From Octopus sinensis (lineage: Eukaryota), in assembly GCF_006345805.1 (NCBI RefSeq), contig NC_043009.1, positions 44,826,001 through 44,890,000 of the forward strand: a stretch of DNA of 64,000 bases, in the 5' to 3' direction. A program made the position numbers and the translations under genes. The notes below the pieces were generated by a model. The model had not been told where the DNA came from, did no database searches, and was given only the letters and a program-made list of their open reading frames with translations. The stretch's first letter is position 1. Each line of letters starts with the position of its first letter. Of the stretch, positions 2,917 through 58,985 are shown one piece after another.

Positions 2917-3115
2917 CTCTGTAAGTTGGAGTAAATTCCTTCAACTCTGGGGGTAGAGTTTCATAGAAATAACGCTCGCGAGAGGTGAGAGGTTTGCAAA
3001 GGGTTGTATCATTGAAGTGAAGGACTGAGCAATGACCCCCTACTTGGTGATTGTAGGGTTTCAGCTCGACTAGTCCAGACATCGCCAACTCTGTGTCCAT
3101 AACCAGCTCAGGCAT
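2917..3115 (-). CDS. IP6K: Inositol hexakisphosphate kinase, first coding exon (N-terminus; gene continues left of the window)
   Basis: [67 protein letters not shown] matches the conserved IP6K1/2/3 N-terminus (HQVGGH...CKPL..RE..FYE.LP.E.KEFTP.Y.G). Donor G|GTGAGT at 2916 (phase 1, as I recall for vertebrate IP6Ks). Strong acceptor ttttttctctttttcag| puts the exon start at 3151; in-frame TGA just upstream of ATG 3115. Confidence 0.93.
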
Positions 3116-6100
3116 TCTTAACAATCAGTCAAGAACCACGATACAAACAAACTGAAAAAGAGAAAAAACACAGAAATTACTTTAAATATAAAACTAATTA
3201 ATAATACAAATAAGAAAATAAATTTGACAGAGGAGAAATTTCATTGTGAAAAAGAATAAATATGAAATACAATTGAACCTTTTTATTATAAATCTGTAGA
3301 ATTATACTGCCTTTGTCTCAATTAATTTTGAGAAATATGAAGAGTTTAATAAAATAATATTGTCATTAAACTGAAGTTTTCTATTATAGGCTGGTAGAAT
3401 TGTAAGAATGCGATATAAACACCATGACGTATTTCTTCCAGCTCTTTACATCCTGATTTCAAATTTCACAGCAATCAACTTTGGCATTCATCCTATCAAG
3501 GTTGATAAAATAAATTACTAGTAGAGGTGGGTGGTATCAACTAACTCCATCCCTTGAAAAATATTGGCTGTAAGATGAAATTTTGATGGAAGCGTTTAAC
3601 TTAAATCATGTTTAAAACGGAACGTTTCTATCAGAGAACTGGGTGGATTGGTGTAAACCTACTTTTGATATCAACCTACTTGAGACCACCCTTGATTCTA
3701 CGATATAAACATAAGAAATATATGAAAATCCTGTGAATTCATCGAACCATTTTTGAGACAAGTAAAATAAGATGATTAGCTTTTACAAAGATAGCAGCAG
3801 TAAAAACTAAAAATATATCTTATATCATTTGTATAAAAAAAATAAATAACATTGAAGAGAGAAAAACAGAAGAAACTGAAATTACTTATGGATGTATTCA
3901 CATGTTTATGATAAATAAGTGAATGTCTTTTTCAGAATCGTGAGAATATTGTGAAGAGATTACTTTTAAAATTATTTCCTTGTTTCTTTGTGCTCTGGGA
4001 AGCATTCACGAGGAAAAGCTTTTCAACAGACAGAAGGGGAAAAGTAGTAAAACAAGACTTCCACATTCAAATGATCTAACAATGTGGAAGGTTGTTAAGG
4101 ACACTGTGATGAAAAAGTTTAGAATTAATAAACAGATGGTGACTTTGAAATAATGAGGGAGCCTCTACACAACATACTGCATCAACCTGCTAGAAATAAC
4201 AGCCTGATTTTCCTCAAATTACATCCTAATATCTCTTAGCACATCACAATCTGCATAATTTAATATTAGTCTTTCATGCTGGCAGGAATTGGAAGGTTCA
4301 ACAGGAACCACAAGTCAGAAGGCTATATCAAGCTCCAATGTCTGCTGTGATATAGTTTCTATGACTGGATGTTCTTCATAATACCAACCACTTTACAACA
4401 TGTATCAGACACTTTTCTTGTGGCACCATATTAACATATTAAGGAGATCACTATATCAACCTGCAAGACTAAAAAAGCTCCCTAGGCTAAATGAGAGTAT
4501 AGTAGAGGTGGGGCGGCTTTATGTTAAATGTTGAGAGGCTAAAACATGACAGAGGATCATATCAGGTAAAATACAGTCCTAGATACACAGTGCATGAATA
4601 AAAGATATGATCATTACAACTGAAACATTTTGATCAGTGCTAACTTAGAGTCAGACATCCCACCAAAAATACTCTTTGCAGCTCAATCCTGTTTTAGCAA
4701 AAAGTAGAGCATGCGGTGTGAAGTACTGGCTCTGTGCACATTCTCAATGGATATATGCTCGACTAGATTTGCCTAAAAGATGACCTCAACCAGAACTAAC
4801 AGAGACTATACAACCCAAAAGTAGCTGAATGGATAAGCTACTGGATTAGCAGCACATGAGTCACAGATCATATCAGCTGCAATTGTTTCATTGTGTGCAT
4901 ACATGTGTGTGAGGGGGAGAAGAAGGGCATGTTTTGATTGTTTTGCACGCAAAAATATTAAAATGCTTCAGACAGTCATGCTAAAGAAGTTAATAGAGTA
5001 TGTATACACACATACATATATATAGGTATATAAATATATATATATATGTGTATATATATATATATAAATTTCTATACATATATATATATTTATACATGTA
5101 TTAATATGACTTAGCTTATATAGGTTGGCCATTAATATCTCAGGCCATGTCTAAATGTGTGTGTGTGTGTGTGTGCATGTACAATGGCTGTGTTACTGGT
5201 TGTACCCACAGATACTGTCTCAAAAGACAAAGACGATTGGATATTTTGTTTCATTTTCTTTCATGTTTAAATTATAAATCGAAAAAAATTGTTCACAAAT
5301 ACGAACATGTTATATTTCATGATTATTTTTAAAATTGTAACTGCCCTTTCCAATTTTATCCTTTAGCCATAGGGATTGTTTCTGCTCTAGAAACAGAAAT
5401 TTCCTGTAGTCTTTAAGAACTTCTAAATTGAAATGCAGTTTTAAATTGAAATACCACTTTTATATATATCTAAAGAAGAATGTAAAAGGAAAAAAATCTT
5501 CAACCACTTTTTCTATTCATAAGTCTTTATATACTCCAATCCTTCAAGCGTTAATCACCAACTCTGATACATCATCCATCTATACAAAATATCAATGTTT
5601 CTCATATCTGCTAATCTTAGATTCTGACCCAACTTTTACAATAGTTGATATTTCATGAGCATTACTTTTACTATTTAAAACATGGAATACTTAAATGTTA
5701 TAGCTCCCATGGGAGCCATCATCGTCATCATCATTTAATAACCATCTTCCAGACAGGCATGGTTTGGACAGTTCAATAGGATCTAAGAAGTCAAACTCCA
5801 GTGTCTGCTTTGGCATAATTTCTACTGTTGGATGCCCTACTTATTGCCAACCATTTTAGATATTGGACAGTGTTCTTTTTTTTTTGTTTTTGTAACACCA
5901 GCACTAGTGAGGTCACCATGTACCTCAAAAGACAAAAAGTGCTTTCTGAGATACATGGCTAGCCCAACATTATATAAAGTGGGTAAGAATTGCTGGACAG
6001 CAAGTAAAAGAGTGATAGCGATATGTAAGGACGTACCCTCAAGGTACAAGAAGGTGAATAGTGAGAGCAGAGACAGAAGTTCAGAAAGGACAGGGTGGGT

Positions 6101-56346: not shown

Positions 56347-56409
<63 letters not shown>

Positions 56410-56767
56410 CCACAGCTGTTGTTACTTCCATCAATACTGAAAATACTCCAAACTGGAATAACATGTACCAGATGGCAGCAAGCAAGCAAGCAAACTAGAA
56501 TATTGAATGAGCATTGGTGAGATTAATAATGTTCAGCAATTTTTGAAGCCAGGAAGGACAGAAAGTAAGACAACATGAAAAACAGTACGGTGGCAGTGGC
56601 AGTGGTGGTGGTGGTGGTGGTGGCAACAAACCAGAGCCACACCTATGATAATCATCAATAAAATAAACTTGTTTGTTTGATAAATAAACAACAAATAATA
56701 TGACCTATATCTTTCAGAGACATTAATGTAGTAGTAGTGAGTGGTAGAGTTGCTGACAGTGTAAAGG

Positions 56768-57100
56768 TACAAACAAGCCTATAATAAAACAGTTATACAA
56801 ACAAGCCTATAATACAAACAAAGACTATAATAAAGCTGGTACAAAAATAAACATATTAAAGTTGGTATAAACATAGGCATAATGATAAAGCTAGTATAAA
56901 CAACATAAACACTATAATAAAGCTGGTATAAACAACATAAACACTATAATAATGCTTGTATAAACAACATAAACACTATAATAAAGCTGGTATAAACATA
57001 AACATTATAATAAAGCTGGTATAAACAACATAAGCATGATAATAAAGCTAACATAAACACAGTAACAAAGCTGATATAAACAAACATGAATGCTATAATG
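56768..57100 (+). repeat. Degenerate ~33-bp minisatellite (ctataataaagctggtataaacaacataaaca)
   Basis: About 9-10 imperfect units; resumes in degraded form at 57565-57610 after the rRNA-derived insert. Confidence 0.8.
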
Positions 57101-57564
57101 CGGGTGCCGGCAATGTCAACTTGGCTGCATCTGTCCCATTCAGTACGAGAGGAACCGTGGGATCAGAGCAACGTTTTGCATGCTCACTTGATAGAGCGGT
57201 GGTGCCAGGCTGCCTCTGAGCGATAATGGCTAAACGCCTCTAAGCCGGAACCATAGCTGGACCAGAGTTGTTTTCCAAAGGCGTCTCAACCTCAAGTCGC
57301 ATTCCTTAGCTCGGCTTCAGCCGTCCACCCGTCACGTCCACGTGGGGAGTGGCAGCATCGCCAGTGGAATTGACATTTTGGGACGCGGGCGGCGGTGGCA
57401 TCTGTGCTGTTGTAGTTGACGTCCCACCCCGACTTGTTTGAAGAAATCGAGGTGAAAAGGATCGCTTGCATACGACTCGACTTGCCATTCAGAGTGACAT
57501 GCTTAGTAGAGCAGCTACCACACTGTGATCTATTGAGTCTCTTCTTGCAAACGACACGATCTGT
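57101..57564 (+). pseudogene. Retrocopy of the 3'-terminal ~460 nt of a divergent eukaryotic 28S rRNA
   Basis: Sarcin-ricin loop AGTACGAGAGGAAC (57142-57155) in a paired helix; GGCTAAACGCCTCTAAGCC; 3' motif TAGTAGAGCAGC...GATCTATTGA; ends GATCTGT like mature LSU rRNA; TSD tataatg at 57094-57100 and 57564-57570. Confidence 0.85.
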
Positions 57565-57762
57565 ATAATGAGGTTGAAATAACTATAAATACTACAAAAA
57601 ACTGGTACAGTAAAGGATTTCTTATCTGGCTTCTAGAAATCTGCAAATACTATGTAATCATCATGCAATATACTGTACAATGTATTGAGAAAGCAAACTG
57701 TGTTTTTGAAGTTGGATAATTTGCATATCGTGTACCAAAAATAGAGTTGCTCTTTACTTTTT

Positions 57763-57998
57763 ATAAATAAATGCACCCTTTTAAAGCCTAGCCAGGCTCA
57801 TGGGCCCAGTTTCCCAGCATATATGTTCCCCAGCTGGACAGGACGCCAGTCCATCGCAGCATTACTCATTTTTGCCAGCTGAGTGGACTGGAGCAAAGTG
57901 AAATGAAGTGTTTTGCTCAAGAACACAACACGTTGCCCAGTCCAGGAATCGAAACCACAATCTAACGATCATGATGCTGACACCCTAACCACTTAGCT
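57763..57998 (-). mobile_element. Second copy of the Meta/V-like tRNA SINE
   Basis: Homologous to 1823-2087. Confidence 0.85.
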
Positions 57999-58985
57999 AC
58001 TGATAAAGACTAAACATATTCTGCTTTAGAATTGTATTAATTTGTACCTGTATTTGTAAAATAAAATCATGTTCTTTCCTTTTCCTCATTTAATTTTTCA
58101 TCCTATAAACATTATTCTGTATACATGGTACAGCATGATATATTTTAAGAATTTTAAGTGGATTAATATATATCAAACAGATCCTGCTTTATAAATGTAT
58201 TAATTTGAATCTTAAATACAATTCAGTTCTTTACTTTTCGTAGTTTGTTCCATATTTCAGGATAACATTTACTCTCTCTCTCTCTCTCTCACTCCCTCAC
58301 TCTCAGACATCTGAGACACTTCTGGCCTCCAGCTCATCAGATAACTGGTTCACGACTGCATAAACATAAGTACTACAATAAAAATGGTATAAGCATAAAA
58401 CTGTACTAATAGTTGTTTTTTGTTTTTTAGCTCAAGCTCACAAAATTCCATGACACACAAACACAGACACACAAACATATACACACACATATATATACAT
58501 ATATACGACGGGCTTCTTTCAGTTTCTGTCTATCAAATCCACTCACAAGGCTTTGGTCAACCAGAGTATATAGTAGAAGACACTTGCCCAAGGTGCCACA
58601 CAGTGGGACTGAACCCAGAACCATGTGGTAAACAAGCTACTTACCACACAGCCATTCTTACGTCAATATATGTATACATATATGATGGACTTCTATACAG
58701 TTTCTGTCTCCCAAATTCACTCACAAAGCATTGGTCAATCCAGGATTATAGAAGACACCTGCCCAAGGTGCTGCACAGTGGGACTGAACCCAAAACCACA
58801 GGGTTGTAAAGCAATGGTTGCAGTGAGAACAAGGAAAAAGGACTGTAATGCTTATGATGCTGTTACTGATGGCAATGGTAATGATTATGATAATGACGAT
58901 ACTGCTGCTGCTGATGATGATAATGACTTACTTAGAAAGTCGTGCCAAAAGAAAAAGCTAATAAAGTCATTTTAAGTGTGTGTGT

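What the first reader, a model, noticed from the sequence alone, without database searches (positions are those of the whole stretch)
57094..57570. Tail-less, TSD-flanked retrocopy of a strongly divergent 28S rRNA 3' end (SINE28-like)
Seen: a 464-bp GC/CpG-rich island inside an AT-rich minisatellite, bounded by a 7-bp direct repeat (tataatg). It ends exactly at an LSU-type 3' end (GATCTGT) with no poly(A). Divergence from canonical metazoan 28S is large but compensatory: the SRL helix is GTCCCAT/GTGGGAT instead of CCTGC/GCAGG, GGC...GCC closes the AACGCCTCTAA loop, TCAGAG pairs with CTCTGA, and CGTCC/GGACG pairs in the expansion segment. The donor was therefore a functional, highly derived rRNA. 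Established: 28S 3'-end retrocopies (SINE28) are described in mammals, and cephalopod nuclear rRNAs are long-branched. Inference: LINE machinery retroposed mature rRNA. The donor may be the host rDNA, a variant host rDNA class, or a eukaryotic parasite/symbiont.
Basis: partly seen in the sequence, partly recalled or inferred. Interest (0 to 1): 0.75.

Follow-up and report, generated by a model that had tools for sequence, protein, structure and literature searches.

The report
Decayed retrocopy of host 28S rRNA
This is an old, mutated, dead copy of the last ~463 bases of the animal's own large ribosomal RNA, pasted into a repeat by a jumping-gene enzyme; it is a real but ordinary retro-pseudogene, not a trace of a foreign or unusual ribosome.

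Summary
Window 57101-57563 is an LSU rRNA 3' end (Rfam RF02543 positions 3006-3399 of 3401, 71.3 bits). It stops within 1 nt of the mature 28S 3' end, has no A-tail, and is bracketed by TATAATG at 57094-57100 and 57564-57570. It sits at the decaying edge of a 32-bp minisatellite. Read contigs confirm both junctions in two organism labels.

The "strongly divergent but compensated, functional donor" reading fails. The copy is ~85% identical to the genome's own rDNA, including the lineage-specific expansion segment. Of 68 substitutions, 38 are CpG>TpG/CpA. The host segment scores 137.3 bits. Standard pairs fall from 78 to 69 of 88, and the two "compensatory" changes match a neutral simulation (1.7 expected). 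About 10 further differences are an older rDNA state shared with other old copies.

At least 12 other copies in this genome end at the same 28S 3' end with varied 5' ends. Some have A-tails, and some are fused to a SINE.

Best reading: an old LINE-made retro-pseudogene of host 28S rRNA (TPRT). It lacks SINE28's tail and shows no amplifying lineage. This scan has already noted 28S retrocopies and 28S-SINE chimeras elsewhere in this genome. Low interest.

The parts
57094..57100 (+). 5' copy of the 7-bp target-site duplication TATAATG. Its last G could equally be the first 28S-derived base.
57101..57563 (+). 5'-truncated retrocopy of the host 28S rRNA 3' end, covering domain VI with the sarcin-ricin loop, the last expansion segment and the 3' terminal helices. 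About 85% identical to present host rDNA and CpG-decayed.
57142..57155 (+). Intact sarcin-ricin loop motif AGTACGAGAGGAAC inside the copy.
57378..57477 (+). Expansion-segment stretch. About 10 differences from modern rDNA here are shared with 8-12 other old copies, so they reflect an older rDNA state and not decay of this copy.
57564..57570 (+). 3' copy of the TSD TATAATG. It directly follows ...GATCTG, so there is no A-tail. Its first T could be the last rRNA base.
56808..57049 (.). AT-rich 32-bp minisatellite (7.9 units) that forms the target context. Degenerate units continue to 57100 and beyond 57571.

Best explanation
Window 57101-57563 is an old retro-pseudogene of the host's own 28S rRNA.

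Inferred mechanism: a non-LTR retrotransposon endonuclease and reverse transcriptase nicked AT-rich minisatellite DNA. It primed on the native, non-adenylated 3' end of mature 28S rRNA with 1-2 nt of microhomology. It copied about 463 nt and then stopped, which gives the 5' truncation. A second nick 7 bp away produced the TATAATG duplication.

Shown: after insertion the copy decayed neutrally, mainly by deamination of methylated CpG. The rDNA itself also changed at about 10 sites of the expansion segment.

The copy has no evident function. Which LINE family did the work is not known.
For: 1. rRNA identity and an exact 3' end. The Rfam match runs to model position 3399 of 3401. Homology to host rDNA stops at the point where at least 12 other independent copies also stop. 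Their 5' ends vary from ref 750 to ref 1866.
2. A 7-bp TSD with a chance rate of about 0.5-1.5%. The reconstructed empty site reads in register with the minisatellite.
3. The donor is the host. The best genome matches are rDNA units at 83-85% identity, carrying 28S upstream and repeated spacer downstream. The expansion segment also aligns, at 73%. The host consensus letters are the ones carried by very deep rDNA contigs in the reads.
4. The divergence is decay.
   - 38 of 68 substitutions are CpG transitions, CpG count falls from 73 to 29, and CpG observed/expected falls from 1.51 to 0.86.
   - Substitutions are equally dense at paired sites (25 of 176) and unpaired sites (42 of 289).
   - Rfam score is 71.3 bits against 137.3 for the homologous host segment.
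   - Standard pairs number 69 of 88 against 78 in the host, and the neutral simulation gives 68.0 +/- 2.6.
5. Sister copies show retroposition hallmarks. L057 carries A20. In L059 a 17-nt TSD brackets the 28S piece plus a SINE. L062 has a 5' inversion.
6. The junctions are real in contigs from independent runs.
Against: - There is no A-tail and no attached LINE or SINE 3' module, so nothing identifies the reverse transcriptase.
- The TSD is short and lies in repetitive AT-rich DNA, so on its own it is significant only at about the 1% level.
- No empty orthologous site was seen. The one more distant organism did not cover the flanks.
- No LINE ORF lies nearby. That is expected for a trans event, but it gives no help.
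Confidence: 0.9

Rival explanations
1. The donor was a functional but highly derived rRNA: either a variant host rDNA class or the LSU of a parasite or symbiont. Its divergence was maintained by compensatory changes.
For: Two pairs (57129/57258 and 57138/57158) changed G-C to A-T on both sides. About 10 differences are shared with other old copies, so the donor was not identical to today's rDNA.
Against: - Both two-sided changes are CpG opposite CpG. Three of the four combinations of deamination on the two strands keep such a pair, and the simulation expects 1.7 events against 2 observed.
- Nine pairs are newly broken, and a G>A change at 57232 lies in the universally conserved CUGAACGCCUCUAAG loop.
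- The Rfam score is about half that of the host segment.
- The shared differences also occur in long rDNA-plus-spacer fragments of this genome. One of them, T at 57477, is still the rDNA letter of a related organism. They are therefore an older host state.
- The nearest sequence is host rDNA.
Confidence: 0.02
2. A member of a self-propagating SINE28-like family. A master 28S 3'-end element, transcribed by Pol III, was amplified by LINE machinery.
For: It is derived from the 28S 3' end, is under 700 bp, is TSD-flanked, and is one of at least 13 copies ending at the same 3' end. SINE28 is defined on similar features (PMC4994717).
Against: - There is no simple-repeat or A tail.
- 5' ends are scattered, with no shared head.
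- At non-CpG columns the copy is closest to rDNA (7.5%), not to another copy (8.0% or more), which gives a star-like pattern.
- The shared variants are also found in rDNA fragments.
Confidence: 0.04
3. DNA-level origin. A piece of rDNA was captured at a double-strand break, or moved by ectopic recombination or segmental duplication, with no RNA intermediate.
For: The genome holds many dispersed rDNA fragments that do run into the spacer (L022, L023, L026, L028), so rDNA DNA does move. The copy has no A-tail.
Against: The 3' boundary coincides within 1 nt with the mature rRNA end, and no spacer is included. DNA-level fragments in this genome do include spacer. The 7-bp duplication of the target, and sister copies with A-tails or SINE fusion inside one TSD, also argue for an RNA intermediate.
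Confidence: 0.04

Closest known systems
SINE28 of mammals (Longo et al. 2015, PMC4994717)
   Same: Derived from the 3'-most part of 28S rRNA, under 700 bp, flanked by TSDs, dispersed, and sometimes inserted inside other repeats.
   Different: SINE28 copies carry a simple-repeat or A tail and are reported as Pol III-transcribed, with some copies closer to one another than to rDNA. The window copy has no tail, shows no master lineage, and its transcription was not tested.
Tailless retropseudogenes of therian mammals (Schmitz et al. 2004; Noll et al. 2015, PMC5322556)
   Same: Retrocopies of non-polyadenylated cellular RNAs that have TSDs but no A-tail. That paper lists ten 5'-truncated tailless 28S copies in human.
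   Different: The mammalian class is mostly 3'-truncated at internal sites, attributed to internal priming by L1. This copy keeps the complete native 3' end, and it sits in a mollusc whose recently active LINEs are reported as RTE, Dong-R4, CR1 and L1-Tx1 (PMC13282606).
28S rRNA/LINE-1 and U6/LINE-1 chimeric retrocopies (bioRxiv 10.1101/2025.02.02.635956)
   Same: 28S fragments are incorporated by template switching during TPRT. Sister copies in this genome (L059, L062, L064, L065) are 28S 3' ends joined to the 5' end of a SINE. In L059 one TSD encloses both parts.
   Different: The window copy itself is not chimeric: the TSD follows the 28S end directly. In this genome the partner is a SINE, not L1.
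Dispersed rDNA-derived pseudogenes (Robicheau et al. 2017, cited in PMC10946416; reference seen only, paper not read)
   Same: Decayed rRNA gene fragments scattered outside the rDNA arrays.
   Different: Those include DNA-level fragments. This copy has the boundaries of an RNA molecule.

Membership tests
Eukaryotic LSU rRNA-derived sequence (Rfam RF02543) | Covariance-model score above the family's gathering score | tested here: met
   71.3 bits against a gathering score of 50, model positions 3006-3399 of 3401.
Functional rRNA gene or variant rDNA class | Secondary structure kept as well as in the host rRNA, and an rDNA context (upstream 28S, downstream spacer) | tested here: not met
   69 standard pairs of 88 against 78 in the host, and 71.3 bits against 137.3. 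The flanks are a minisatellite, not rDNA.
TPRT retro-pseudogene of a cellular RNA | 3' boundary at the end of the mature RNA | tested here: met
   The copy ends ...GATCTG(T). The most common end among sister copies is ...GATCCGC, which is Rfam position 3401.
TPRT retro-pseudogene of a cellular RNA | Target-site duplication directly flanking the insert | tested here: met
   A 7-bp TATAATG repeat with a chance rate of 0.5-1.5%.
TPRT retro-pseudogene of a cellular RNA | Independent copies with a common 3' end and variable 5' truncation | tested here: met
   At least 13 copies, with 5' ends from ref 750 to ref 1866.
TPRT retro-pseudogene of a cellular RNA | Poly(A) or simple-repeat tail (classical L1-type processed pseudogene) | tested here: not met
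   No tail at 57563/57564. Sister copies L057, L055 and L064 do have A-runs.
SINE28 | Piece of the 28S 3' end under 700 bp, with TSDs | tested here: met
   463 bp with a 7-bp TSD.
SINE28 | Simple-repeat or A tail | tested here: not met
   The criterion is taken from PMC4994717.
SINE28 | Amplifying lineage: copies closer to each other than to the resident rDNA | tested here: not met
   The non-CpG distance is smallest to rDNA (0.075) and is 0.080 or more to every other copy.
SINE28 | Pol III-dependent transcription from internal promoter motifs | not testable with these tools
   Needs nascent-RNA assays with polymerase inhibitors, as in PMC4994717.
Tailless retropseudogenes (mammalian sense) | No A-tail, with TSDs | tested here: met
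Tailless retropseudogenes (mammalian sense) | 3' truncation at internal single-stranded or A-rich sites (internal priming by L1) | tested here: not met
   The 3' end is complete.

The most novel reading that the evidence does not exclude
In this octopus genome, non-L1-type LINE machinery repeatedly takes the native, non-adenylated 3' end of 28S rRNA as a template. It does so either directly, as in the window copy, or after jumping from the 5' end of a SINE RNA, as in the sister copies. On this reading the set of copies is a by-product of close contact between the reverse transcriptase and ribosomes. It would also be a fossil series recording past states of the rDNA and the true RNA ends.
Probability: 0.25. 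Interest if true: 0.4.

Novelty: new member of a known kind. Interest (0 to 1): 0.2.

Why it matters
It matters little on its own, because rRNA retro-pseudogenes and rRNA chimeras are known. Two points are useful.

First, a caution about method. In a CpG-rich RNA gene, CpG lies opposite CpG in helices, so neutral deamination of a dead copy often keeps base pairs. It then mimics compensatory evolution. "Compensatory" changes seen without the host sequence as a reference are not evidence of function.

Second, the family of dated copies preserves older states of the octopus 28S expansion segment. It could be used to follow concerted evolution of rDNA and to map rRNA ends.

Tried and rejected
- **Rfam at gathering threshold over the whole 64-kb window** listed nothing. 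The local E-value scan found the match at 71.3 bits. The blank was therefore not evidence of absence.
- **TSD search for sister copies** was mostly blank or ambiguous.
  - The 10-mer in L064 lies inside the SINE itself, so I rejected it.
  - The 11-mer in L061 resembles a SINE motif, so I rejected it.
  - In L065 the repeat is offset 9 nt from the 5' junction and is only suggestive.
- **A 'second class' of copies ending about 45 nt into the spacer** (L022, L023, L028, L058, L061). I first took these for precursor-RNA ends. They share further spacer-like sequence with each other, so they are DNA-level fragments of a variant rDNA unit, not RNA ends.
- **5' ends clustering at the sarcin-ricin loop** (L024, L025, L027). 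Dropped, because the L025 alignment continues upstream in decayed form.
- **A full tree** was not built. Pairwise non-CpG distances answered the question.
- **Empty allele.** None appears among the listed joints, but 140 joints were not shown, and the more distant organism C did not cover the flanks. Presence or absence in an outgroup therefore remains open.
- **Organism names** are coded in the read tools.

Full report
**1. What is there**

The stretch 57101-57563 stands out in composition. GC is 0.55-0.59 inside it and 0.25 in the left flank. It contains the sarcin-ricin loop motif at 57142-57155.

A local Rfam scan aligns 57114-57562 to the eukaryotic LSU model RF02543, positions 3006-3399 of 3401, at 71.3 bits and E 1.5e-16. 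The whole-window scan at gathering threshold had listed nothing, so that blank meant nothing.

The heptamer TATAATG lies at 57094-57100 and again at 57564-57570, directly after ...GATCTG. There is no A-run.

The left flank is a 32-bp minisatellite of 7.9 units at 56808-57049. With the insert and one heptamer removed, the site reads on in register with the decaying repeat.

A flanking direct repeat of 7 nt or more, allowing 2 nt of slack, is found at 0.5% of positions at this spacing. The rate is 1.5% where flanks are AT-rich, and 9 of 630 for simulated duplication-free insertions into the reconstructed site.

**2. The assembly is sound**

Contigs from four public runs were laid on 56400-58300.
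- The likely source run X1 has exact contigs over 57004-57170 and 57523-57789, which bridge both junctions.
- Run X19, from another organism label and another study, bridges both junctions with 0 and 2 differing letters.
- Run X18 bridges the 5' junction.
- No joint that skips the insert was among those listed.
- The fourth organism, C, did not cover the flanks, so it says nothing about an empty site.

**3. The donor is the host's own 28S**

The genome is 2.72 Gb in 13,516 contigs, and the window is C13:44826001-44890000. It holds at least 41 related places.

Loci L002-L021 are rDNA-like. They carry 28S sequence upstream and a spacer with ~141-bp tandem repeats downstream, and they are 92-97% alike. 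In the homologous 472 nt they are 97-100% alike. Their consensus letters are also the ones carried by extremely deep contigs in the reads, so this consensus is the real high-copy rDNA.

The window copy is 83-85% identical to these loci, and its homology starts at 57100 and ends at 57561-57563. Identity is 88.5% in the two conserved parts and 73% in the lineage-specific expansion segment, which still aligns. A foreign LSU would not share that segment.

These are the TCAGAG/CTCTGA helix, GGC...GCC closing the conserved loop, and the expansion-segment pairings. The host SRL stem is ATCCCG/CGGGAT, and the window's GTCCCAT/GTGGGAT is a mutated form of it.

**4. The divergence is decay, not compensation**

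Against the host consensus there are 68 substitutions and 7 indel columns. The substitutions break down as follows:

| Class | Count |
|---|---|
| CpG>TpG | 22 |
| CpG>CpA | 16 |
| Other transitions | 14 |
| Transversions | 16 |

CpG count falls from 73 to 29, and CpG observed/expected falls from 1.51 to 0.86.

The homologous host segment scores 137.3 bits against 71.3 for the window copy.

I mapped the 88 consensus base pairs of the Rfam alignment onto both sequences. The host forms 78 standard pairs and the window copy 69. Nine pairs are newly broken, and ten changed on one side, mostly to G-U. Only two changed on both sides: 57129/57258 and 57138/57158, both G-C to A-T.

Both two-sided changes are CpG facing CpG. 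In a helix CpG pairs with CpG, and three of the four combinations of deamination on the two strands keep pairing. That follows directly from the pairing geometry.

I ran a simulation that places the same numbers and kinds of substitutions at random eligible sites:

| Measure | Observed | Simulated |
|---|---|---|
| Standard pairs | 69 | 68.0 +/- 2.6 |
| Two-sided pair-keeping changes | 2 | 1.7 |
| Newly broken pairs | 9 | 10.5 |

Substitutions are equally dense at paired sites (25 of 176) and unpaired sites (42 of 289). One substitution (G>A at 57232) lies in the universally conserved CUGAACGCCUCUAAG loop.

So there is no sign that the donor differed functionally from host rRNA.

**5. An older rDNA state**

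Of the 31 non-CpG differences counted in a second alignment, 8 are shared with 8-12 other old copies: 57379, 57394, 57402, 57407, 57415, 57435, 57458 and 57477. Two CpG-class differences, at 57378 and 57417, are shared in the same way. The sharers include long rDNA-plus-spacer fragments such as L022, L023 and L026. Sixteen differences are private.

At 57477 the present rDNA of the more distant organism C still has the window's letter T. These sites therefore record the rDNA as it was. The modern array has since changed in the expansion segment. This is my inference from the sharing pattern, and concerted evolution of rDNA is established knowledge.

At non-CpG columns the copy is 7.5% from modern rDNA and 8.0% or more from every other copy. 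The pattern is star-like, with no master-copy lineage.

For dating I used the repeat time-scale given for Octopus vulgaris, where a JC distance of 0.065 is about 18 My and 0.2 is about 56 My (PMC13282606). That puts the insertion very roughly in the range of 15-40 My. This is only an order-of-magnitude inference, because the element is unusually CpG-rich.

**6. A recurrent process in this genome**

Beside the window copy, at least 12 places end at the mature 28S 3' end. The most common end is ...GATCCGC, which is Rfam position 3401. Their 5' ends lie between reference positions 750 and 1866.

- **A-runs:** L057 is followed by A20, L055 by an A11 run and L064 by A9.
- **SINE fusions:** L059, L062, L064 and L065 are joined through 4-20 A-rich bases to the exact 5' end of a ~228-bp SINE. 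That SINE is a real dispersed repeat, with at least 40 full-length copies at 93-96% identity scored out of 623 candidates.
- **L059:** a 17-nt direct repeat with 15 of 17 matches encloses the 28S piece plus the SINE. This indicates one event with a template jump.
- **L062:** an inverted 28S stretch lies upstream of the direct 28S piece, as in twin priming.

These hallmarks support reverse transcription by LINE machinery for the whole class. For the window copy itself, priming on the bare rRNA 3' end is inferred, and the enzyme is unknown. No LINE ORF lies nearby.

**7. Comparison with what is known**

SINE28 (PMC4994717) shares the source region, the size and the TSDs. It is defined with a tail and with Pol III transcription. 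The window copy has no tail and shows no amplifying lineage, so I do not file it there.

Mammalian tailless retropseudogenes (PMC5322556) include ten 5'-truncated tailless 28S copies in human, but they are typically truncated at the 3' end by internal priming. This copy is complete at its 3' end.

28S/LINE-1 chimeras (bioRxiv 10.1101/2025.02.02.635956) parallel the sister copies here, not the window copy.

Earlier notes of this scan on other parts of this genome already describe octopus 28S retrocopies and 28S-SINE chimeras. My own tests agree with them.

**8. Verdict**

The retrocopy reading is supported. The idea of a divergent, compensated or foreign donor is refuted. This is an ordinary, old rRNA retro-pseudogene, a new member of a known kind, and of low interest.

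The main lesson is that CpG decay in helices can imitate compensatory change.

Noticed in passing
L059:1501-1870 (G000:C17, about 8023486-8023850); also L062, L064, L065: 28S 3'-end pieces of 106-216 nt are joined by a short A-rich linker to the complete 5' end of a ~228-bp tRNA-like SINE. In L059 one 17-nt TSD (15 of 17 matches) encloses both parts, which indicates a template-switch chimera.
   Followed up: partly
L062:1381-1520 (G000:C12, about 57.69 Mb): An inverted stretch of 28S expansion-segment sequence lies directly upstream of the direct 28S piece. The arms are 1381-1395 and 1506-1520, 93% complementary. This is a 5' inversion like the one produced by twin priming.
   Followed up: partly
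L002-L021 (chromosome-scale contigs C1, C2, C3, C4, C8, C10, C11, C14, C18, C19, C28 and two small contigs): rDNA-like units or fragments, with 28S plus a spacer of ~141-bp tandem repeats, are assembled on many chromosomes at 92-97% mutual identity. One subgroup (L017-L020) carries a G>T change inside the sarcin-ricin loop motif (GTACTAGAGG). It is unclear which of these are true arrays, dispersed pseudo-units or assembly placements.
   Followed up: no
L022, L023, L028, L058, L061: Older 28S fragments share a different 3' spacer from about 45 nt after the 28S end. This points to a second, older rDNA spacer variant surviving as dispersed DNA-level fragments.
   Followed up: no
window 57765-57995, minus strand: A very abundant tRNA-like SINE lies about 200 bp downstream of the insert. 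Read contigs pile up to millions in summed depth, with many joints and loose ends. It is unrelated to the 28S copy.
   Followed up: no
window 56590-56623: A (GTGGCA)n/(GTG)n microsatellite lies upstream of the minisatellite. Read contigs break there.
   Followed up: no
window 57477, and the table of other letters: The present rDNA of organism C keeps T where organisms A, B and D have C, and the old retrocopies have T. Retrocopies could therefore be used to polarise rDNA changes between octopus species.
   Followed up: partly
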